From the NCBI GenBank assembly GCA_977030845.1, contig OZ365118.1, positions 16,926,001 through 16,990,000 of the forward strand: a stretch of 64,000 nucleotides of DNA. The letters run 5' to 3'. A model generated the notes under the pieces. It searched no databases and was not told where the DNA came from. It saw nothing but the letters and a program-made list of their open reading frames with translations. Origin of the DNA: Fimbriosthenelais zetlandica. Its lineage: Eukaryota. Made by a program: the position numbers and the translations under genes. How positions within the stretch are numbered: the stretch's first letter is position 1; each line of letters opens with the position of its first letter. Shown in pieces: positions 15,676-24,540 of this stretch.

Positions 15676-15690
15676 GTCTCTCTAATTGTT
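15676..15690 (+). repeat. Target-site duplication, left copy (GTCTCTCTAATTGTT)
   Basis: Identical to 22153-22167 and abuts the poly(T) that is the element's tail. Confidence 0.93.
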
Positions 15691-15733
15691 TTTTTTTTAT
15701 CTTTCCACCCCTCATAGAGGACGTGCATTTATT
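15691..15733 (-). terminator. Polyadenylation signal and poly(A) tail of the LINE
   Basis: AATAAA at 15733-15728 followed 29 nt later by A8 (15698-15691) running into the TSD. Confidence 0.7.
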
Positions 15734-15920
15734 AAACTTTCAGAACACTTACAGGGTATTTTTTTGTTTTTTTTTTAACAATGAATAAGAATATATCAGT
15801 TAGATAGAAATACAAAATAAAAGTTGAGGTACATTGTCCACTCTAGTTACAATAATCAAAATTACTCTTGGAAAATTTGTTTTTTGTTAGAGATATCTGA
15901 AGCCTTTAAAGACTTATAAC

Positions 15921-18900
15921 TTAACATGCCTCATATAGAAATTTTAGTAGTTCTGAATCCAGGTTTTTACAACGCTTCGAACTGATATATTCTGACCAAC
16001 ACCATAACTTCAGTTCTCTTATCCAGATTAGCAGTTGACAATTCTTTTCATAAAATAATCTACGTTTTAATATAAAATGTTTAGTGAAGATTATTAAAGC
16101 ATTTAGGAGATTCAGTTCGTGAGTTCTTGGCGTGTGGAGTATTCCTAATAATAATTCAGCGTCTGTTATACCTTTAAGATCAGGCCAATTAATTTGATTT
16201 ATCAGTGTTAACCATTTAAAGATTGATTGCCATAAATTACTTGAGTGGTCACAGGTGACAAAGAAGTGAACCAAGCTATCTACCTCATTACAGGAGTCGC
16301 AAAATTCCGAGTCAGAAACACGAATTAGATATAGGTACTTGTTACATGGACACAATCTATGTATAAGCTTGTACATGAAGGATTGTAACTTTGTATCACT
16401 AGTGACGTAAAAAGGCAGTTCATATATCTTTTTCCACAGCTCTAAATCATACCTATCTTCAAAAAAGTCAGGGAATTCAACTTTCCATTTGGCTCTATAA
16501 TTATACATCTGCTTCTTACAATTCAGAAGAGACCAGTAAAAGACTGAAGTCTGCGTATACAGTACATCAATGCATTTTTCACCCTTATGTTGAACATATA
16601 AAATGGGACCATGAATTTCGGTAAAAGTAGAGGATATAACAATTCTCCATGAGAGAGGTATAGACAATCGGATACTGAGCAAGTCCAAAAAGGTAACACT
16701 AAAACCCATATGTTCTGACAGCTCTTCAGCAGATCTGAAATTCCTGTCTCTTATGAGATCCCCAATACACCATACATTCTTACGAGCCCAATTCATATTC
16801 AAAGGCAACGATTTGCCATCACGCGTTATGTATTTATTTTCCCATATAGACTCTGACAATATTTGCTTTTCTGATACAGGCTTTTTGTAATACAACTCCT
16901 CCCATGATTTCATCAACTTTGTATAGAAACAGAAACCCTTGAAGTCATGTACATTACATTGAAATTTACAATTAAAAAACCTGAGAATATCAAAAGGCCA
17001 GTTCGTCAGTTTGATGAATATTTCCTGATATGGCTTTAATGTACCTTCGTCCTGTAAACACAGACGTCTAACCCAAGAGATATGAGCAGCTTTCACGCGA
17101 GTACTTAAATCAGCTAATTTCAAGCCCCCCTTAGCAATATCCTGCGTCAGATAATCGTAGGCAACCTTTGGTTTTTTTGAATCCCATAGATACTCTATAA
17201 TTATCTTCTTAAGTTCAGTATATACCTTACTAGGGGTATATAAATTACCAGCTAGATATCCCAGAATGGAAATAACAAGTGAATTAAGAATTGTGATTTT
17301 CCCTTTTAAGGATAACGATCTGTGGGTCCAGTTGGATATTACAGATTTCATTCTCATAAGACAAGGTTGGAAGTTAAGGGTGTAACTATCCAATACCGTG
17401 TTGGCACTCGTGAAATATACTCCTAGAATTTTTATTTTGTCTGCGACAGAAAACCCCAGTTCCTCTAATTCATTCTTAGCAAAACCTCTAACAATTAACA
17501 CTTCAGATTTCTTTGCATTGATTGCTAAACCTGAGAACTTATTAAATTGATCTAACACTGTAAGAGACGTGACAATATCTTTCATACAGGAAGCAAAGCA
17601 AGTTACATCATCTGCATAACAGGAGAGTTTAAAATGTGATCTAATTTTAAAACCTTTTATATCTTTGTGACATCGGATTTTCACAGCAAGAACCTCCAAG
17701 ACTAATACAAAAAGGAATGGCGAGAGACAGCAGCCTTGTTTGAACCCCCTACAGTTGGGGAAGTAACGAGAGGTGTAACCAGCATTAATAACACATGTTT
17801 CAGATTGATTAAGCAGAGCCCGTATCCAGTTAACAAATTTCTCACTGAACCCATAAGCTTGCAGGGTAGCAAACAAGGTACTCCAATATACGGAATCAAA
17901 AGCCTTTCTAAAGTCCAAGCCGAGAACGGCTAAATTCCTGTTAAAAGTATTTGCAAAATTTATAATATCATCCACTGCTCTTATGTTCTCTCCAATGTAT
18001 CTACCTTTTACAAATCCTGACTGATCAGTGTGTATCAAACTTGCCAAAAAAGGAGTCAGTCTCTTAGCAAATGCTTTAGTTAAAATCTTGTAGTCAGAAT
18101 TCTGCAAGGTTATGGGCCTCCAGTTTTCAACCAGAGTAAGATCTCGGTCTTTCTTAGGAATTAAATTTATAACTCCCCGACGCTGTTCAGTGCTGAAAAC
18201 ACCCCTTTCTAGGCCTGACAACAGGCTAGTACAAACCCAGTGTTTTACGTCGTTCCAGAAAAATTTATAAAAGTCTACAGATAGGCCATCAGTACCTGGT
18301 GACGTACCATTCTTTAGGGACTTTAAAGCCGTTAGCAACTCTTTTTCTGAAAAAGGCGCATCAAAAACCTTAGAATCACAAGCACTTATACGAGGTAATT
18401 CCACCTGACTAAGATAATTCTTACAATCATCCTCTGAAGGTTGTGCATTGGAGTTATACAATTCACTATAAAATTGAGCTTGCAAGTCACTAATAACCTT
18501 ACGATCAGTGGAGTATTCATTATCACTCAATTTGACCATGGACATAGTTTTCCGTTCTCCGCTTCGCTTTTCTAAGTTCAGAAAATATTTAGAGGGACGT
18601 TCCCCTTCCACTCGCCACTTAGCTCTACAGCGAAATGCTGCTCTCACCGATTTACACCTCTCTATACCTTCAAGTTCTCTCCTGACTGAGTTCAACTCTA
18701 AACCCACATCAATACCTATGTCGTCCAAGGACGACAACCTTATAAGTTCATTACTCAAGGATTCTTCCAATTCTTTTTCCTGCCTCCTTTTATTTTTTCC
18801 ATAGATAATGGAAAATTCTCTAATTTTTAACTTCAAGAATTCCCATTTTAAGACTGGGTCCATATCTGGGTCCTCAGTCTCAGCGGACTTAAATAGGTTC

Positions 18901-19703
18901 TTTAAATCTTTTACAAAGTTTTTATCATGGAGGAATAAATTGTTAAATTTCCAGAGCCCTGGACCACGACCAAATTCAACCAGTTTGATTTCACTAAAGA
19001 TTGGATTATGATCCGACCAAGTCTTGTATAATATATCTACCTTAGAGACCTTATTGAACAGGTTGTCTGAGAAGAAAATATAATCTATTCTCGATGCAGA
19101 GTCGCCTCTATGAAATGTATAACGCTTACGTTCTGGATTTTTTGCCCTCCATGCATCTATCAGGCCTAGATTTTCTATAAACGTTAATAGATTATGATCA
19201 TACAAGGACTGTGAAACACCATTTACATTTTTTCTATCCAGACTGGGAGAAAGGGCAGTATTGAAGTCACCTCCAATAATCAGATTAGTACAATCAAAAG
19301 TCGATAAAGAAGCCTCCAGAGAATCCAAGAACGCCAGTTGGTCTTGTAGGTGAGAGCCAACGGGAGCATAAAGGTTACAGATAGTAAAAACCTGGCTAGA
19401 AATTTCCAAGCTTATAATTAAGAAACGTCCCGTAGGATCTAATGTCTTCTTAGTAAGTTTGCTAGGAAATCTAGGATTAAATAAAATTCCAACTCCTCTG
19501 GAAGAAGAAGATCCATGGCACCATATACATTTCCCTCCCCATTGGTTGGTCCAGATAGACTCCATAGATAAAGATGAGTGGGTTTCTTGCAACAAACATA
19601 AGCTAGCCTTACAATCCCTTAGTCTTTGAAATACTGCACGCCTCTTCGTGGCATCATTTAGACCATTTACATTCCAAGATATTAAATTTACTTTATCCGA
19701 CAT
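15921..19703 (-). CDS. LINE ORF2p, 1260 aa from the ATG: APE-type endonuclease, reverse transcriptase and CCHC zinc knuckle
   Basis: Endonuclease motifs SWNVNGL, LQETH, GGDFN, RIDY, SDH. RT motifs SPGTDG, WRPITL, QSGF, LDFRKAFD, QGCCLSP, YADD (17607-17618). C-x2-C-x7-H-x4-C at 16251-16301. The ORF track starts at the preceding TTG (19706); the first ATG is at 19703. Confidence 0.97.
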   Translation of the reverse strand: MSDKVNLISWNVNGLNDATKRRAVFQRLRDCKASLCLLQETHSSLSMESIWTNQWGGKCIWCHGSSSSRGVGILFNPRFPSKLTKKTLDPTGRFLIISLEISSQVFTICNLYAPVGSHLQDQLAFLDSLEASLSTFDCTNLIIGGDFNTALSPSLDRKNVNGVSQSLYDHNLLTFIENLGLIDAWRAKNPERKRYTFHRGDSASRIDYIFFSDNLFNKVSKVDILYKTWSDHNPIFSEIKLVEFGRGPGLWKFNNLFLHDKNFVKDLKNLFKSAETEDPDMDPVLKWEFLKLKIREFSIIYGKNKRRQEKELEESLSNELIRLSSLDDIGIDVGLELNSVRRELEGIERCKSVRAAFRCRAKWRVEGERPSKYFLNLEKRSGERKTMSMVKLSDNEYSTDRKVISDLQAQFYSELYNSNAQPSEDDCKNYLSQVELPRISACDSKVFDAPFSEKELLTALKSLKNGTSPGTDGLSVDFYKFFWNDVKHWVCTSLLSGLERGVFSTEQRRGVINLIPKKDRDLTLVENWRPITLQNSDYKILTKAFAKRLTPFLASLIHTDQSGFVKGRYIGENIRAVDDIINFANTFNRNLAVLGLDFRKAFDSVYWSTLFATLQAYGFSEKFVNWIRALLNQSETCVINAGYTSRYFPNCRGFKQGCCLSPFLFVLVLEVLAVKIRCHKDIKGFKIRSHFKLSCYADDVTCFASCMKDIVTSLTVLDQFNKFSGLAINAKKSEVLIVRGFAKNELEELGFSVADKIKILGVYFTSANTVLDSYTLNFQPCLMRMKSVISNWTHRSLSLKGKITILNSLVISILGYLAGNLYTPSKVYTELKKIIIEYLWDSKKPKVAYDYLTQDIAKGGLKLADLSTRVKAAHISWVRRLCLQDEGTLKPYQEIFIKLTNWPFDILRFFNCKFQCNVHDFKGFCFYTKLMKSWEELYYKKPVSEKQILSESIWENKYITRDGKSLPLNMNWARKNVWCIGDLIRDRNFRSAEELSEHMGFSVTFLDLLSIRLSIPLSWRIVISSTFTEIHGPILYVQHKGEKCIDVLYTQTSVFYWSLLNCKKQMYNYRAKWKVEFPDFFEDRYDLELWKKIYELPFYVTSDTKLQSFMYKLIHRLCPCNKYLYLIRVSDSEFCDSCNEVDSLVHFFVTCDHSSNLWQSIFKWLTLINQINWPDLKGITDAELLLGILHTPRTHELNLLNALIIFTKHFILKRRLFYEKNCQLLIWIRELKLWCWSEYISSKRCKNLDSELLKFLYEAC

Positions 19704-20070
19704 CAATTAGTATTCTAGAATACAGATTTAGAGCAATTAATGTGACCTCAATGTGCATTTCTTTTGACATTTCACAAAAAAGTAATAACAAGCAATAACA
19801 TGAACATGAATTCTGACATTCAACCTTAACAAAAGTCAAACACTTATCTTTAACAGGATGTGTGTGCTTTCTCATGGTATATAACATCTCATTGTACCGA
19901 ACCTAGTACATAAATTCCTTCATTATTGTAGACTGATCATAATGATTAATAATACAGAATCATTAATGACCCAGGACATATTTCTAATCCCTTTAGATCC
20001 TCAGACGAGATCATCGACTTTAATATGGAAGTTTAAATTTAAGACCATAGTTGAAAATACATCGTCTTTC

Positions 20071-21741
20071 TTAGCCTTCATTCTTTAGCTCCTCACGAAC
20101 CACCATTAGAGACTTCCCCAGTCTATTCCCACCTGACCAAGAGTGTGGGTGCAGGGCTGACTCATCCTTCAGATTATAGCCAATACCCCATCGAGGGCAT
20201 TTGGAAGCTTCGCCCAGACGACGGTTCTCTGTAGACAAGAGGTATTCTAGGGCTGCAGGATTGCCACGAAACTTGGATAGAAGAGCCTGGTACAATGACG
20301 TTTTCAGTCCATCTTCCCACTTCTGTAGGCCAGGCGATGAACGGAGGGAATTCAGTATCTGTTTACATGTTACTGGAGAGGGAGCTGCCAAAGCTTTTCT
20401 CTGTAGGTCATCTCGGCCGACGGAAGCTGCTCGTGAGAACGCCAGATAGTGTTCCACCGTTTTGAAGAAATGAGAACCAACCTGGAATGTGCCTTCAAAG
20501 TGGTTGGAGAGTGGGGAGCTGCTTCCAAAAAATATTACTACCTCCTCCGTCCAAACATTACACAGGTTTATTGGGTTCAAGTCCGGTGGAAGTTCATGTA
20601 GATCGTAAGCTCTGTATCTCTTATCATTGATACTTAGCTCAAAGTTTATGATACGGGGCTCGTGGTATATTTGAGGCTTTTTCTTGGCTGCGGCTAATAT
20701 CATTCTTAATCGGGATAGATCTTGTTGAAGGAGAGGGGGTATATCCTCCCGTATACTGACGGATTTAAAACCCTCATTGTTCAATTTTGTTTTGCTCCAC
20801 CACACTTTATCACGACTGCTATGAGTGCAGAATCTTACCAGAATAGGCCTCGGAGAACCATCATGTCTCTTTTTGCCCAGCCTAAATGCATAATCTATCA
20901 TTACAGTAAGACCTAGCGATTTAGAGCAGAAATTAGATACCGTGCTGGCTGTGTCCTCCTGTAAGCCCGATTCTGGAATGCCTGCCAACACCAAGTTTTG
21001 TCTCCGACGGTTTGCCTCAGCCAGCAAAATATCATACTCAATGACTCGAACTCTCTCTGCCACTAGGTCTTCCAAAGGTATATCCCTTAAGGAGGCCTTG
21101 ACCAGCTTATCCACACGGCCAGAGATATTCTTGTTTATGGCAGCTATAGAACTATCATTAGCTTCTGCCAGCCCTACCACCTCATTGAGATCTTTTCTGA
21201 GATATTTGCAAGTAGCCTGGACGTTAGCTATATCTTTCTTATTTGTCTCAAGGGACAGTTCAATGCTATCTAGCTTCTTCAGTTTTTTCATGTCTTTTTG
21301 AATATCAGTGAGTACAGACATTACCTCCTGGAGTGTCGGAGAGCTCTCAGCCGAACTAGAAGATGACGATGGAGTCGTAGAGGGACCTGATTGTGATTCA
21401 CTTTTATCCATACGCTTTCCCGCTCCCGCCCCAGAGATATGGTTTTGCATGTACTCTGGGACAAAGACATTATCCACTTCTACTTGTGAGGATATAGGGG
21501 TAGAACTGATTGAGTTACCAGCGGCCTTACTAGGCGAAACAGTTATGTTTTCAGGGGTTACCAGTCCTCCGGCCCTTTTCCTCGTAGTGGCCTCGGTAGA
21601 AGGGCTCCGTGCGGCCAAGGGTTGTCGACGGTGTTGCCTTTTCCTACTTCCCTGGCCCTGCACCTCCATAAAGTCCTCCATTGTACGGGGACGACCATCC
21701 TTACTAATACTACTATTACTAGGCACAAACATATCTTCCAT
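20071..21741 (-). CDS. LINE ORF1p, 556 aa: Ser-rich N-terminus, coiled coil, L1-type RRM and CTD, C-terminal NADAR (YbiA/DUF1768-like) domain
   Basis: Uninterrupted ATG to TAA. Heptad-rich region at about aa 135-245. L1 ORF1 motifs RRQNLVLAGIPE (from aa 246), AFRLG...PRPILVRF and IREDIP. Residues 401-553 carry the NADAR motifs. Confidence 0.93.
   Translation of the reverse strand: MEDMFVPSNSSISKDGRPRTMEDFMEVQGQGSRKRQHRRQPLAARSPSTEATTRKRAGGLVTPENITVSPSKAAGNSISSTPISSQVEVDNVFVPEYMQNHISGAGAGKRMDKSESQSGPSTTPSSSSSSAESSPTLQEVMSVLTDIQKDMKKLKKLDSIELSLETNKKDIANVQATCKYLRKDLNEVVGLAEANDSSIAAINKNISGRVDKLVKASLRDIPLEDLVAERVRVIEYDILLAEANRRRQNLVLAGIPESGLQEDTASTVSNFCSKSLGLTVMIDYAFRLGKKRHDGSPRPILVRFCTHSSRDKVWWSKTKLNNEGFKSVSIREDIPPLLQQDLSRLRMILAAAKKKPQIYHEPRIINFELSINDKRYRAYDLHELPPDLNPINLCNVWTEEVVIFFGSSSPLSNHFEGTFQVGSHFFKTVEHYLAFSRAASVGRDDLQRKALAAPSPVTCKQILNSLRSSPGLQKWEDGLKTSLYQALLSKFRGNPAALEYLLSTENRRLGEASKCPRWGIGYNLKDESALHPHSWSGGNRLGKSLMVVREELKNEG
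20080..20541 (-). other. NADAR domain within ORF1p (aa about 401-553)
   Basis: Ordered motifs over about 155 aa: IFF-GSSSPLSNHF, F-KTVEHY, SP-x2-CK, W, AL-x-SKF-x2-N, YLLST, LGEAS, WGIG, W-x-GGNRLGKSLMVVREEL. These match the NADAR/YbiA consensus as I recall it (SNF...EHY...KF...LLxT...E...WG.G...GxNxLGxxLMxxR). Confidence 0.9.
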
Positions 21742-22152
21742 ATTCCAGTCCGGGAGTTTGTAGGAGGCAGGATGCTAGTGTCAGGCAGAAGGGCTACTAG
21801 ACAAGATGGCGGCAAGCGTCTCAAGCTGCAAGGGATTGTGGGAACTCACTGTTGTTAGCAACCAAGGCAGCAACGGGGGAAGCCCCAACGTCATGAACGT
21901 GACGTCAGCATCTCGCGCCATATTTCAGCCAAACCCACCATAACGGTCTCGACTAACTTCTTCTTTCGAATCCGAAGCGAGCAAACTCCATGCCTAACGG
22001 CTCTGTAGTCCAGAGTGATCCTGGTTCCTTCTTCTATAAGGCTGACCAGTCCACAGGTCCACTAATGGCTCGGAGTATGAGAAATAATGTTAAAAACGGG
22101 AGCGCTACATCCCCACCAGTACTACCGCCCCGCCACCTGGCGGGGATTAACC
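21742..22152 (-). promoter_or_regulatory. LINE 5'UTR and probable internal promoter
   Basis: Lies between the TSD and the ORF1 ATG and is CpG-rich relative to the flanks. Contains a GC box (22125-22130), a CRE palindrome TGACGTCA (21900-21907) and YY1-like motifs (about 21916-21925 and 21802-21812). L1-clade elements use internal Pol II promoters. Confidence 0.6.
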
Positions 22153-22167
22153 GTCTCTCTAATTGTT
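22153..22167 (+). repeat. Target-site duplication, right copy (GTCTCTCTAATTGTT)
   Basis: Identical to 15676-15690 and abuts the 5' end of the element. Confidence 0.93.
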
Positions 22168-24540
22168 AATTGACGTTTTATGTTTATAATTCCCTCCATT
22201 TGACTTCCCATAGAAGAGAGCCTGGTCCAGAACTCGGGTCTTGCTGGCAGGGTGAGAGTCGGCCCGTGAGGGAGCCTTGTAATTTGTGTGAGAGACCATG
22301 CTGACATTTAAATGACAGGTGTGTGTAGGCAGGTTAGCTAGCCGCCCGCCATCTTGGCCGCCGCGCCGGGTGTAAGGCAGGGATGACACCCCAATTATAC
22401 ACGTAAAGGTTGTGTCTGGCACATGTAACGACTCACCACAAGTCATTACGCTACACCATGTCTAACTTAGACCTTTCATTATGTATAACTGCCTTTTACT
22501 ACAGGTCTGTAAGCTACACTCTCAGAAAAGTTCACAGGACTGCTCCGTTAAAAAACGGGACAACACTGACAAGAAGGATCGTCATTGTCCCGTTATTCCA
22601 TTGGTTTTACCACTGTTAGTTCTTTGATTAGGTTCTAGATTGATTTCTTTCATTTGTCGATTGTATTTCAAGTTGTAGATTGAATTGTCGTCTTTCTAAT
22701 TGTGAATTGACAGCTAGTTTTTAGAGTGTAAAGAGTCAAATTCTCAAGTAAGCATAAAAGAAGGCGCAACAATCCAAACTTTAACTTTGTTCCACTCTTC
22801 AACTTCCCAAAACATATGTCTATAAGGAAAGAAAGAATGCCCTGCTATAGCCTGCCAGTAGAAGAGTGACAGAAAGGAAGAAGTCTCTCAAAAGTTCACT
22901 CCAGAGAATGAATTGGACCTTTCTTAAATGCCATCCATTAAGTCACAAAAGAGTGCAGTTTCATCCTCCGTGCATTCACGCCTCTGTCTGTGAAATGAAG
23001 GAGGTGGTGTATGGCTCTAAAAGACATATATATACTTCCCGAGTCTTCCTGCTAGATGATTCATCCACTTGAGACGACATCTGTTCCCTCATCGTCTGAG
23101 AATACGGTGATGAGGTGTTGTTCAATAGAACGTGATATAGCGCCGGGTTATTGGCGCGCATACCCAATGTGGATGGATCACTATAGCCCTGCTTCCTCTA
23201 TTATCGTCTAAAATCTTTATATTTCCATTTACGCCTGTCCGCCTAATGTCCAATCCTCTCTGAAAAATTCATAGGGCAGTATTGCACCAAAACAGTGGGA
23301 ACATGGCGTTATGGCCGCTCGCAGTCGTCCCATTTTGTTGTAGCCACTATTTTGCAATGCTTTCCACTGTATTTTTTATGGTTCAGATGTATAAACGCAA
23401 TATGTATTTGCCATGTACACCACCCTAATGTGGTTCAGTTAGGCTGTACCTTATTAGTTTCATTCCAGTTAGGGTGAAATTCACTTTTAAGTTTAAAGTT
23501 TTAAATTTCATATGTCAAGGCACCCGACTCTGATAAGCTTTCCAGTGAAACATTACCTTTGGTAGCGTTCAGCTTTTATAATTCGCCTCACTTGGCTGAA
23601 TAATATCACATATTTCTTTGAAAACTTGATACTTAAAGGACTTCCTTTTATGTTGAGCCATAGAAAATATCGCTGCGATCAGCAACAGCGGCAGTAGCAG
23701 TTGAAGACAGTATAAATGCTGCAGAAAGGACCCAATGTATGGTTTGTGAGGAGCAGCTCAACTTGGCCTGTATGGTCGGTACTGAGCAGCTCAACCTGCC
23801 TGGGGAGAGACTCGCTAGGCCCACACCACTGTCACCCACCCACTCACAGACACGGGACACAGTCAGTTTATTCAGCCTCTCAGCATAATGCTTCACAAGG
23901 CGAGCAAGTCTGAATTGAGCTGCTCCCAAACAAACCCTTGCCGAGATCTGCCTTAAAACACCTCCCAAATTACCGCCCGAAATTAACCGTGGCACACTGG
24001 AAATTGGAAGCACAAATTCTGCAATGTGATGCCCTAGTGATTGTTATGCTAATCGGGGGTGGGGGCCTTGGATAATTAAGACAAGGAAAATGGGGCTTTC
24101 ATTATAGTGCTGTTGATGATCGGCATCCATGTATTTATTAGGGCTGATTATGCTTCATTGTAGAATGATTGCGACTTGTGACTTGCTCATTAGCAAGCTG
24201 GCGGATTTCAATGGGGACAATATTTATAATTACTAATTTATACACTTTTTTGGATGATTATAGTTACAAGTAGCTCTGGTTTTGTCAAACAAATGATCAT
24301 GTATGGCTATGATCTTTGTCCAGCAGATGATCATGTCAAGTGGCTATGATCTTGCCAGTTAAGTATGAGAACTTCATGCACTTTCTCTATCAATGTGGGC
24401 TAGCAGAGTTTTGCCCTGAAGGAAATGAGTTGTATTTTGAGTGTGAATTTAGAGCCATGTGATGCTCGTTGGATAGATGATGATGTAACTTGGGAATGGG
24501 TCTGGAGAAATAATCTGTGAACTCTAGCTGCGGCATCCAG

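What the first reader, a model, noticed from the sequence alone, without database searches (positions are those of the whole stretch)
20071..21741. LINE ORF1p fused to a NADAR domain: a retrotransposon that may carry its own ADP-ribose-removing enzyme
Seen in sequence: one uninterrupted 556-aa ORF with the usual L1 ORF1 coiled-coil, RRM and CTD followed in frame by about 155 aa with the full ordered set of NADAR motifs, inside a TSD-bounded element, so the domain moves with the element. Established: NADAR/YbiA proteins are N-glycosidases. Some act on riboflavin-pathway intermediates; others are antitoxins that remove guanine-linked ADP-ribose added by DarT1. The family also occurs in phages and some RNA viruses. 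Known accessory ORF1 domains in LINEs include esterase, PHD and zinc knuckles; I do not recall NADAR as an established one but cannot check. Inference: L1 ORF1p trimers coat the element RNA, so many NADAR copies would ride on the RNP. They could erase or bind host ADP-ribose marks on the RNA or single-stranded TPRT intermediates, like viral macrodomains. Guanine-specific ADP-ribosyltransferases (pierisin, CARP-1 types) exist in some invertebrates.
Basis: partly seen in the sequence, partly recalled or inferred. Interest (0 to 1): 0.92.

Follow-up and report, generated by a model that had tools for sequence, protein, structure and literature searches.

The report
LINE retrotransposon ORF1 carrying NADAR enzyme
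A young, intact L1-type jumping gene encodes an RNA-coating protein fused to a NADAR domain, an enzyme type that removes ADP-ribose from DNA and RNA bases; the fusion is real and common in this genome, was mentioned once in the literature for oyster elements, and has never been tested for function.

Summary
Window 20071-21741 (-) is an intact 556-aa ORF1 with five parts: a disordered N-terminus, a coiled coil, an RRM, a CTD and a C-terminal NADAR domain. The RRM-CTD part matches human L1 ORF1p (Z about 12). The NADAR domain scores Pfam E 1e-22 and Z 20.6 against the Phytophthora NADAR:ADP-ribose structure.

ORF1 sits in a 6,459-bp L1-superfamily LINE (window 15689-22147) with a 13-bp TSD, an A10 tail and an intact APE-RT ORF2. 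A second copy on another contig differs by one base and has its own TSD. The element was therefore active very recently.

The fusion is not a one-off:
- This genome holds at least 152 NADAR matches, nearly all in LINE ORF1-like frames of many divergent families.
- 141 of 180 database proteins retrieved show the same RRM-to-NADAR architecture.
- The catalytic residues (E430, R/K437, E511, W475, W518) are almost invariant.
- NADAR is the most conserved ORF1 domain.

Novelty is limited. A 2025 paper (PMC12477816) notes in one sentence that Repbase Tx1 LINE ORF1 proteins of Crassostrea gigas carry NADAR domains.

The proposed function, removal of base-linked ADP-ribose from element RNA or cDNA as a counter-defence, is plausible but untested. 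Four other first-stage notes report the same fusion elsewhere in this genome.

The parts
22153..22165 (-). Upstream target-site duplication, CAATTAGAGAGAC
   Evidence: It is identical to the 13-mer at 15676-15688. The second copy on contig C19 has a different TSD, GATGAACAATAAAT.
22148..22152 (-). Five extra bases (GGTTA) at the 5' junction, not shared with the other copy
   Evidence: The two copies become alike only from 22147 onward. The C19 copy has GGG at this position.
15689..22147 (-). Full-length L1-superfamily LINE, 6,459 bp
   Evidence: It is 99.985% identical (one mismatch, at 21138) to L031:3135-9593 on contig C19, and the flanks are unrelated.
21742..22147 (-). 5' UTR, 406 nt
   Evidence: It lies between the start of homology between the two copies and the ORF1 ATG.
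20071..21741 (-). ORF1, 556 aa plus TAA stop
21337..21741 (-). ORF1 aa 1-135: disordered, S/T-rich N-terminus with a basic SRKRQHRR motif (aa 32-39) that is conserved as xRKRxR in paralogous families
   Evidence: pLDDT is below 50 here. The motif is visible in alignment A1.
21007..21336 (-). ORF1 aa 136-245: coiled coil
   Evidence: The model shows long helices at 138-245. A three-copy model forms an in-register parallel bundle with heptad-spaced contacts: score 0.65 against best control 0.00, runs agree in at least 93% of contacts, and partner pLDDT is at least 77.
20740..21006 (-). ORF1 aa 246-334: RRM
   Evidence: Z 9.1 to the human L1 ORF1p RRM 2W7A. Profile alignment to 2YKP.
20563..20739 (-). 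ORF1 aa 335-393: CTD
   Evidence: It lies inside the Z 11.6-12.2 superposition on human L1 ORF1p residues 109-323.
20074..20562 (-). ORF1 aa 394-556: NADAR domain of the YbiA type, with Glu in the last strand
   Evidence: Pfam E 1.1e-22. Z 20.6 to 8BAU and 17.0 to 2B3W. E430, R437, K460, W475, E511 and W518 align with E43, K50, K75, W89, E125 and W133 of 8BAU.
19704..20070 (-). Spacer between ORF1 and ORF2, 367 nt. It contains a recombination breakpoint at about 19853.
   Evidence: From 19853 downstream the element is 98.4% identical in DNA to the L003/L013 family. The ORF1 of that family is only about 39% identical in protein.
15921..19703 (-). ORF2, 1260 aa from the ATG: APE endonuclease, reverse transcriptase and a Cys-rich C-terminus
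   Evidence: Pfam Exo_endo_phos E 1e-16, RVT_1 E 9e-39, zf-RVT 25.3 bits (just under its cut-off). Human L1 ORF2p E 1.8e-104 over aa 5-874.
15689..15920 (-). 3' UTR, 232 nt, ending in an A10 tail (15689-15698)
15676..15688 (-). Downstream target-site duplication, CAATTAGAGAGAC

Best explanation
This is an autonomous, very recently active LINE of the L1 superfamily (L1/Tx1 group). Its ORF1 protein is an L1-type nucleic-acid chaperone made of a disordered N-terminus, a probable trimeric coiled coil, an RRM and a CTD. A complete NADAR domain with an apparently competent active site is fused to the C-terminus.

Shown here:
- the domain architecture;
- the mobility of the element;
- the spread of the fusion over many LINE families;
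- the conservation of the NADAR catalytic residues.

Inferred:
- ORF1p binds its own RNA in cis as a trimer, so each trimer brings three NADAR domains to the RNP.
- These domains hydrolyse the N-glycosidic bond of ADP-ribose attached to guanine or cytosine bases on the element RNA, on the nascent cDNA or on the nicked single-stranded target.
- This keeps reverse transcription and integration from being blocked by base ADP-ribosylation. It would be a counter-defence or self-repair function, like that of phage NADARs against DarT1.

My confidence is about 0.95 for the architecture and about 0.4 for the base-ADP-ribose hydrolase and counter-defence mechanism.
For: Architecture:
- Pfam NADAR E 1e-22.
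- Z 20.6 to 8BAU and about 12 to human L1 ORF1p.
- Profile hits to 8BAU at 6e-22, YbiA at 2e-10 and L1 ORF1p at 5e-4.
- ORF2 matches human L1 ORF2p at E 2e-104.

Activity:
- Two copies differ at 1 of 6,459 bases and have different TSDs.

The fusion is a lineage trait:
- At least 78 ORF1 matches and at least 152 NADAR matches over the Pfam cut-off in this genome, mostly without internal stops.
- 35 intact ORF1s with RRM-to-NADAR were recovered from the loci fetched.
- More distant ORF1 relatives also run into NADAR.
- 141 of 180 database proteins share the architecture.
- A Logan contig carries an ORF1-NADAR followed by an APE-RT ORF2.

Constraint:
- Between families pS is saturated at about 0.8. 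pN is lowest in NADAR (0.48), against RRM 0.52, CTD 0.54 and coiled coil 0.58.
- E430 is kept in 35/35 genome and 141/141 database sequences, and E511 in 35/35 and 138/141. R/K437, W475, K460 and W518 are nearly invariant.

Trimer:
- The three-copy model scores 0.65 against a best control of 0.00. In the tool's calibration this mark was reached by 21 of 30 proteins solved as pairs of one chain and by 0 of 23 solved as single chains. The runs agree in at least 93% of contacts and partner pLDDT is at least 77. The tool warns that a pass may come from memory of the solved L1 ORF1p trimer.

Biochemistry of the family, from the literature:
- All NADARs tested remove guanine-ADPr from DNA and RNA, and YbiA/NADAR types also remove cytosine-ADPr (PMC11125620, PMC11833690, PMC12945103).
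- Phages use orphan NADARs against DarT1 (PMC11825919).
- CARP-1-type DNA ARTs are mainly found in bivalves (PMC12945103).
Against: - No enzymatic or expression data exist. No sequencing run holding the element was listed.
- No nucleic-acid ADP-ribosyltransferase was shown in this genome. PF01375 found nothing, but its control was silent too. The ARTC genes found look like secreted or GPI-anchored ecto-ARTs.
- The residue equivalent to K50 is Arg. In E. coli C7 NADAR the K95R mutant kept in vitro activity but did not rescue cells (PMC11543638).
- This family alone has Cys (C515) where relatives have Asp or Asn, the equivalent of D130 in 8BAU.
- NADAR/YbiA enzymes can also act on small molecules such as riboflavin intermediates.
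- The one published comment proposes RNA processing rather than defence (PMC12477816).
Confidence: 0.5

Rival explanations
1. The NADAR domain is catalytically active but serves routine RNA or NAD-metabolite processing for the element rather than countering a defence. Examples would be removing NAD-derived adducts or by-products from the RNA intermediate, or acting on a small-molecule N-glycoside.
For: - PMC12477816 suggests processing of the RNA intermediate, citing predictions made for RNA-virus NADARs.
- E. coli YbiA cleaves riboflavin-pathway intermediates (cited in PMC11543638).
- The catalytic residues are conserved, which fits any catalytic role.
Against: - NADARs were inactive on phosphate-end RNA and DNA ADP-ribosylation (PMC11833690), which removes several RNA-end processing ideas.
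- Fusion to an RNA-coating chaperone argues for a polymer substrate rather than a metabolite.
Confidence: 0.25
2. The substrate is base ADP-ribosylation, but it is made by microbial genotoxins (ScARP/Scabin-like toxins of symbionts or pathogens) and not by a host anti-transposon system. The element only protects its own intermediates from environmental damage.
For: - PMC12945103 argues that metazoan NADARs protect against G/C-ADP-ribosylating toxins of Actinomycetes.
- No host pierisin-type ART was found here (uninformative because the control was silent).
Against: - It is unclear why a germline-transmitted LINE would keep such a function across hundreds of copies and many families, when a single host gene would protect everything.
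- CARP-1-type ARTs are endogenous to bivalves and some other invertebrates (PMC12945103).
Confidence: 0.12
3. The NADAR fold is used without catalysis, as an extra nucleic-acid- or ADP-ribose-binding module that extends the CTD of ORF1p.
For: - The domain follows the RNA-binding CTD directly.
- R79 and Y84 of 8BAU, which contact ADP-ribose, are not conserved.
- C515 replaces the usual Asp or Asn in this family.
Against: Both catalytic glutamates, the Lys/Arg and both tryptophans are nearly invariant across 176 sequences that are otherwise 25-45% identical. A mere binding scaffold would not be expected to keep them.
Confidence: 0.08
4. The fusion is an artefact: an assembly chimera, or a chance read-through of a LINE into a host NADAR gene.
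For: None found.
Against: - Two independent copies have the same ORF.
- Dozens of divergent intact families in this genome carry it.
- The same architecture is present in unrelated public assemblies.
Confidence: 0.01

Closest known systems
Tx1 LINE families of Crassostrea gigas in Repbase whose ORF1 proteins carry YbiA-family NADAR domains (noted in PMC12477816, Genome Biol 2025)
   Same: Both are L1/Tx1-group LINEs with a NADAR domain in ORF1, and in both the function is unknown.
   Different: - The paper gives one sentence and a supplementary alignment. It offers no structure, residue analysis, copy census or activity data.
- I could not compare sequences directly, because Repbase was not available, and I could not establish whether this genome is an oyster.
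- Here the fusion is shown across many families, with near-invariant catalytic residues and a very recent insertion.
Ectocarpus Gypsy LTR-retrotransposon lineage with a NADAR domain at the N-terminus of Pol (PMC12477816)
   Same: A retrotransposon carries a YbiA-type NADAR domain.
   Different: The element class differs (LTR against LINE), the host protein differs (Pol against ORF1) and the origin is probably different. The Ectocarpus domain is 54-58% identical to bacterial NADARs among the top hits of the paper's Table S1.
Phage NADARs (T4 gp30.3 type) and orphan antitoxin-like enzymes that neutralise DarTG1 (PMC11825919, PMC11125620)
   Same: A mobile genetic parasite carries a NADAR enzyme. 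The proposed logic is the same: undo base ADP-ribosylation of the parasite's own nucleic acid.
   Different: - Phage NADARs have His at the last-strand position, while this one has Glu (YbiA type).
- The phage enzymes are stand-alone proteins, and the attacking ART (DarT1) is known.
- Here no attacking ART has been identified.
Human and mouse LINE-1 ORF1p (PDB 2YKO, 2YKP, 2YKQ, 2W7A, 2LDY)
   Same: The order coiled coil, RRM, CTD is the same. Z is about 12 over 180 residues, and a parallel trimer is predicted.
   Different: Mammalian ORF1p ends after the CTD and has no enzymatic domain. Sequence identity is about 20%, and Pfam Transposase_22 does not detect this protein.
Esterase (SGNH) and PHD accessory domains in ORF1 of CR1/L2-type LINEs (from my own knowledge, not checked here)
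   Same: These are precedents for an enzymatic or reader domain carried by a LINE ORF1.
   Different: The fold, the chemistry and the presumed substrates (lipids, chromatin) are all different.
P. nicotianae NADAR (8BAU) and E. coli YbiA (2B3W)
   Same: The fold is the same (Z 20.6 and 17.0). The Glu/Lys(Arg)/Glu/Trp active-site set is shared.
   Different: These are stand-alone cellular proteins, about 26% identical to this domain. The adenine-contacting residues R79 and Y84 are not conserved here.

Membership tests
NADAR superfamily (Pfam PF08719 / DUF1768) | Profile match above the curated cut-off over the whole domain | tested here: met
   81.5 bits against a cut-off of 35.1, E 1.1e-22, profile positions 10-163 of 163.
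NADAR superfamily (Pfam PF08719 / DUF1768) | YbiA fold | tested here: met
   Z 20.6 with rmsd 1.9 A over 161 residues to 8BAU, and Z 17.0 to 2B3W. Foldseek E 7e-9 and 1.3e-6.
NADAR superfamily (Pfam PF08719 / DUF1768) | Catalytic Glu that coordinates the distal ribose (E43 of 8BAU, E88 of E. coli C7 NADAR) | tested here: met
   E430 aligns with it. It is kept in 35/35 genome and 141/141 database relatives.
NADAR superfamily (Pfam PF08719 / DUF1768) | Basic residue that coordinates phosphate (K50 of 8BAU, K95 of E. coli C7 NADAR) | tested here: inconclusive
   The residue here is R437. Relatives have R or K in 28/35 and 137/141 sequences. K95R kept in vitro activity but lost in vivo rescue in E. 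coli C7 NADAR (PMC11543638).
NADAR superfamily (Pfam PF08719 / DUF1768) | ADP-ribosyl-base N-glycosidase activity | not testable with these tools
   This needs a biochemical assay.
YbiA family of NADARs (as opposed to the BC4488/DarT1-linked and phage families) | Glu, not Asp or His, in the last strand (E125 of 8BAU) | tested here: met
   E511 lies in the GEAS motif and aligns with E125. It is kept in 35/35 and 138/141 relatives.
DarT1-associated NADAR antitoxins (DarG1) | Asp at the catalytic last-strand position, and a neighbouring DarT1 gene | tested here: not met
   The position holds Glu. The neighbouring gene is a LINE ORF2 and not an ART.
L1-type (type II) ORF1p | RRM followed by the L1-specific CTD | tested here: met
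   Model residues 200-396 superpose on human ORF1p residues 109-323 with Z 11.6-12.2. The RRM-CTD structure 2LDY gives Z 8.3. Profile E 5e-4.
L1-type (type II) ORF1p | N-terminal coiled coil that forms a parallel trimer | tested here: inconclusive
   A three-copy model scores 0.65 against a best control of 0.00 and shows heptad-spaced, in-register contacts. The tool warns that this may reflect memory of the solved L1 trimer and that its calibration used two copies.
L1-type (type II) ORF1p | Match to Pfam Transposase_22 (PF02994) | tested here: not met
   No hit at E<=1. Homology is seen only by the family profile and by structure.
L1 superfamily of LINEs | APE endonuclease plus RT in ORF2, an A-rich tail and variable-length TSDs | tested here: met
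   Pfam APE and RVT_1. Human L1 ORF2p E 1.8e-104. A10 tail and TSDs of 13 and 14 bp.
Tx1 clade within the L1 group | Placement with Tx1 references in an RT phylogeny; many Tx1 elements insert at specific sequences | not tested
   No reference LINE sequences were available. The two insertions lie in unrelated sequences, so this family is not strictly site-specific.

The most novel reading that the evidence does not exclude
Base ADP-ribosylation of nucleic acids, by endogenous CARP-1-like or other ARTC enzymes, is a retrotransposon-restriction mechanism in lophotrochozoan animals. A large radiation of LINEs has answered it by fusing a NADAR ADP-ribosyl-base hydrolase to ORF1p. This would be an animal counterpart of the bacterial DarT1 against phage-NADAR conflict.
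Probability: 0.2. Interest if true: 0.85.

Novelty: new member of a known kind. Interest (0 to 1): 0.58.

Why it matters
If the NADAR domain is active on the element's own RNA or cDNA, these LINEs would be the first retrotransposons known to carry an enzyme that reverses a nucleic-acid modification. It would also imply that base ADP-ribosylation acts on retroelements in animals. That idea is now directly testable. The domain boundaries, the catalytic residues to mutate and a very young, intact element are all in hand.

The census also carries a caution. Many "animal NADAR proteins" in databases may be LINE ORF1 products rather than host genes. This bears on published taxonomic surveys of NADARs in metazoans.

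Tried and rejected
- Word-indexed protein search with the full ORF1 found nothing, probably because low-complexity N-terminal words dominated. Restricting it to aa 215-556 gave only 5 unnamed Logan proteins. A profile search gave 26, all unnamed.
- Taxon range could not be established. Cluster look-ups named only Haliotis rufescens multi-NADAR proteins. AlphaFold DB rows came without organisms. The Atlas search points to Annelida for the nearest clusters, but only on a few records.
- dN/dS could not be estimated. Pairs are either under 3% divergent or saturated at pS about 0.8, so I used the pN ranking of the domains and residue invariance instead.
- Expression: no sequencing run was listed for either kind of search.
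- Host ARTs: PF01375 gave no hit, but its controls were silent, so the result is uninformative. PF03496 and PF01129 found about eight ARTC-type genes. One of them (L069) looks like a secreted ecto-ART with a hydrophobic C-terminus, closest to rat ART2. This neither supports nor refutes DNA or RNA targeting. CARP-1 itself could not be searched because no tool-provided sequence or profile was available.
- An apparent resemblance between the two flanks near 22700 and 15690 was not confirmed by BLAST.
Full report
**1. The observation**

The window holds an uninterrupted 556-aa ORF at 20071-21741 on the minus strand. Pfam places a complete NADAR domain at aa 408-553, with E 1.1e-22 and 81.5 bits against a cut-off of 35.1, covering profile positions 10-163 of 163. 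No other family reaches significance.

An AlphaFold2 model was built on an alignment of 15 family members (A1). Mean pLDDT is 75. Residues 1-133 are disordered and most of aa 160-556 is above 85. Foldseek and VIA-align give two independent sets of top matches.
- The C-terminal 163 residues superpose on the Phytophthora nicotianae NADAR:ADP-ribose structure 8BAU (Z 20.6, rmsd 1.9 A, 161 residues) and on E. coli YbiA (Z 17.0).
- Residues 200-396 superpose on chains of the human LINE-1 ORF1p trimer (Z 11.6-12.2, human residues 109-323). That region covers the end of the coiled coil, the RRM and the CTD.

A profile of A1 finds 8BAU (E 6e-22), YbiA (2e-10) and human L1 ORF1p (5e-4) in the PDB. The ORF1p alignment runs through the characteristic NLxLxGxPE and PRxIxVRF RRM motifs. 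Pfam's own L1 ORF1 model does not detect the protein, so the L1 relationship rests on the family profile and on structure.

The domain map is:
- disordered N-terminus, aa 1-135;
- coiled coil, aa 136-245;
- RRM, aa 246-334;
- CTD, aa 335-393;
- NADAR, aa 394-556.

A three-copy model of aa 136-400 gives a parallel, in-register bundle with heptad-spaced contacts. The score is 0.65 against a best control of 0.00. In the tool's calibration this mark was reached by 21 of 30 proteins solved as pairs of one chain and by 0 of 23 solved as single chains. The runs agree in at least 93% of contacts and partner pLDDT is at least 77. The tool warns that such a pass may be memory of the solved L1 trimer and that its calibration used two copies.

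**2. The element**

ORF1 is followed, after a 367-nt spacer, by a 1260-aa ORF2 at 15921-19703. ORF2 has an APE endonuclease, a reverse transcriptase and a Cys-rich C-terminus. It matches human L1 ORF2p at E 1.8e-104 over aa 5-874.

A second copy on contig C19 is identical over 6,459 bp except for one base. That base is window 21138, which changes Ile202 to Leu. This comparison defines the element as window 15689-22147.

The two copies have unrelated flanks and their own TSDs:
- the window copy has CAATTAGAGAGAC, 13 bp, at 22153-22165 and 15676-15688;
- the C19 copy has GATGAACAATAAAT.

Each copy has 3-5 unshared bases at the 5' junction and an A10 tail. They are therefore independent and very recent insertions of an active, not site-specific LINE. 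They are neither a segmental duplication nor a domesticated gene.

**3. The fusion is a lineage trait**

Searching the whole genome (447 Mb) with ORF1 gives at least 78 matches. Many are intact frames of 460-670 aa that align to the end of the NADAR domain at 24-43% identity. In the loci fetched, each is followed by an APE-type ORF2.

The Pfam NADAR model finds 152 matches over its cut-off, out of 483 first-look candidates. About nine in ten have no internal stop and most lie in open frames of 300-860 aa. A search with only the coiled coil, RRM and CTD finds further, more distant ORF1s. Where I fetched them, these too continue into NADAR or were cut by a frameshift. I found no clear sister family that lacks the domain, except one deletion derivative (L056).

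An exhaustive HMMER search of 1.84 billion representatives gives 175 proteins at E<=1e-30. One of them lies on a Logan contig next to a 1260-aa APE-RT ORF2. Nearly all are unnamed Logan or ENA predictions. The Atlas search points to eukaryotic clusters, most commonly Annelida, but on few records.

Four other first-stage notes of this scan report the same fusion elsewhere in this genome.

**4. Is the NADAR domain functional?**

I used the residues defined for 8BAU and E. coli C7 NADAR in PMC11543638 and the alignments. The correspondence is:
- E430 = E43
- R437 = K50
- K460 = K75
- W475 = W89
- E511 = E125, the last-strand Glu that marks the YbiA family
- W518 = W133

Across 35 intact genome paralogues and 141 database relatives:
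- E430 is invariant;
- E511 is kept in 35/35 and 138/141;
- position 437 is R or K in 28/35 and 137/141;
- W475, K460 and W518 are nearly invariant.

One oddity is that the equivalent of D130 is Asp or Asn in relatives but Cys (C515) in this family only. In 8BAU that residue makes only a water-mediated phosphate contact.

Synonymous sites between families are saturated (pS about 0.8), and within-family pairs are too close, so dN/dS cannot be estimated. The nonsynonymous difference is nevertheless lowest in NADAR (0.48), against RRM 0.52, CTD 0.54 and coiled coil 0.58. The domain is therefore at least as constrained as the RNA-binding core of ORF1p.

**5. Mechanism**

Established biochemistry from the literature:
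- Every NADAR tested removes ADP-ribose from guanine in ssDNA and RNA.
- NADAR and YbiA types also remove it from cytosine.
- They are inactive on thymine-linked and phosphate-end ADP-ribose (PMC11125620; PMC11833690; PMC12945103).
- Phages carry orphan NADARs that neutralise DarT1 (PMC11825919).
- CARP-1-type guanine-specific DNA ARTs are reported mainly from bivalves and also from some cnidarians, sponges and other bilaterians (PMC12945103).

The inference is as follows. An ORF1p trimer coating the element RNA would hold three NADAR domains beside the RNA and the TPRT intermediates. Hydrolysis of base-linked ADP-ribose there would keep the template and the cDNA readable. I rate this counter-defence or self-repair reading at about 0.4.

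The rivals are:
- a catalytic role unrelated to defence (0.25);
- protection from microbial rather than host ARTs (0.12);
- a non-catalytic binding module (0.08);
- an artefact (0.01).

On the host side I found no pierisin-type hit, but the control was silent, so this is uninformative. I found about eight ARTC-type genes, including a tandem cluster on contig C11. The one I examined is a 290-aa protein with a signal peptide and a hydrophobic C-terminus, closest to rat ecto-ART2. Their targets are unknown.

**6. Comparison with what is known, and novelty**

Full-text searches found one relevant paper. PMC12477816 (Genome Biol 2025) reports a NADAR domain at the N-terminus of Pol in an Ectocarpus Gypsy lineage. 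[quoted passage not shown] So the fusion has been seen before, in passing.

This report adds:
- the structural confirmation of both halves of the protein;
- the residue-level case for catalysis;
- the scale of the radiation in one genome and in public data;
- evidence of very recent activity;
- the explicit counter-defence hypothesis.

I file it as a new member of a known kind. I could not decide between Tx1 and L1 sensu stricto, because no reference RT sequences were available. I also could not identify the host species.

**7. Other observations**

- The element is a mosaic. From window about 19853, which is 150 nt upstream of the ORF2 ATG, it is 98.4% identical in DNA to another family (L003, L013). 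The ORF1 of that family is only about 39% identical in protein, and its 5' part shows no DNA similarity. The 5'UTR-ORF1 module has therefore been exchanged recently between lineages, and both modules carry NADAR.
- A second group of families places a 100-400-aa Pro/Thr/Gln/His-rich tail after NADAR.
- Two loci suggest a different endonuclease type next to a NADAR-bearing ORF1. This was not resolved.

Noticed in passing
window 18735-19853 (breakpoint at about 19853) compared with L003:3470-4587 and L013:2704-3822: The element is a mosaic. Downstream of about 19853, in the ORF1-ORF2 spacer, it is 98.1-98.4% identical in DNA to another LINE family. The ORF1 of that family is only about 39% identical in protein, and its 5' UTR and ORF1 show no DNA similarity. 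This points to a recent exchange of the 5'UTR-ORF1 module between lineages that both carry NADAR.
   Followed up: partly
L034-L053 (for example L039:1094-2884, L040:1307-3475, L053:1551-4031): A second, large group of ORF1-NADAR families has a short N-terminus and a 100-400-aa low-complexity tail rich in Pro, Thr, Gln, His and Ser after the NADAR domain. NADAR is therefore not always C-terminal. Pfam finds only NADAR in these proteins.
   Followed up: partly
L056 (677-aa frame from 1659, +) and L036 (- strand): L056 is a deletion derivative. The ORF1 RRM-CTD runs in frame into an endonuclease that begins ...LNVRS.... L036 has a NADAR frame followed by an ORF2 that begins ...LNIRS.... This endonuclease start differs from the WNVNGLN start of the element studied, so a second LINE clade may also carry a NADAR-bearing ORF1. 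Full elements could not be fetched.
   Followed up: partly
P0013, P0148 (Haliotis rufescens XP_048255699, XP_048255702) and P0053 / L033:1734-4961: These are very long predicted proteins with tandem NADAR domains: 4240 aa with 7 matched stretches in abalone, and 1075 aa with 5 on an ENA contig. They match only the NADAR part of ORF1. They may be host multi-NADAR genes or merged gene models.
   Followed up: no
L069:1351-2223 (-) = G000:C25:30507182-30508054, and G000:C11:49557685-49568790: The genome encodes about eight ARTC-type (Pfam ART) ADP-ribosyltransferase genes, including a tandem cluster on C11. The one examined has a signal peptide, R/S/ExE-like motifs and a hydrophobic C-terminus, and is closest to rat ecto-ART2. 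Their targets are unknown.
   Followed up: partly
window 20197-20199 (ORF1 codon 515): This family alone has Cys where 32 of 35 genome paralogues have Asp and database relatives have Asp or Asn. The position is equivalent to D130 of 8BAU, which makes a water-mediated pyrophosphate contact.
   Followed up: partly
window 21625-21681 (ORF1 aa 21-39): A short motif, ME..ME...xRKRxR, is conserved in the otherwise disordered and variable N-terminus across paralogous families. It may be a nuclear localisation signal.
   Followed up: no
(PMC11125620) set: Published surveys list NADARs in molluscs, annelid-like taxa, cnidarians and amphioxus as animal genes. Given hundreds of LINE ORF1-NADAR copies in one genome, part of that signal may come from transposons.
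   Followed up: no
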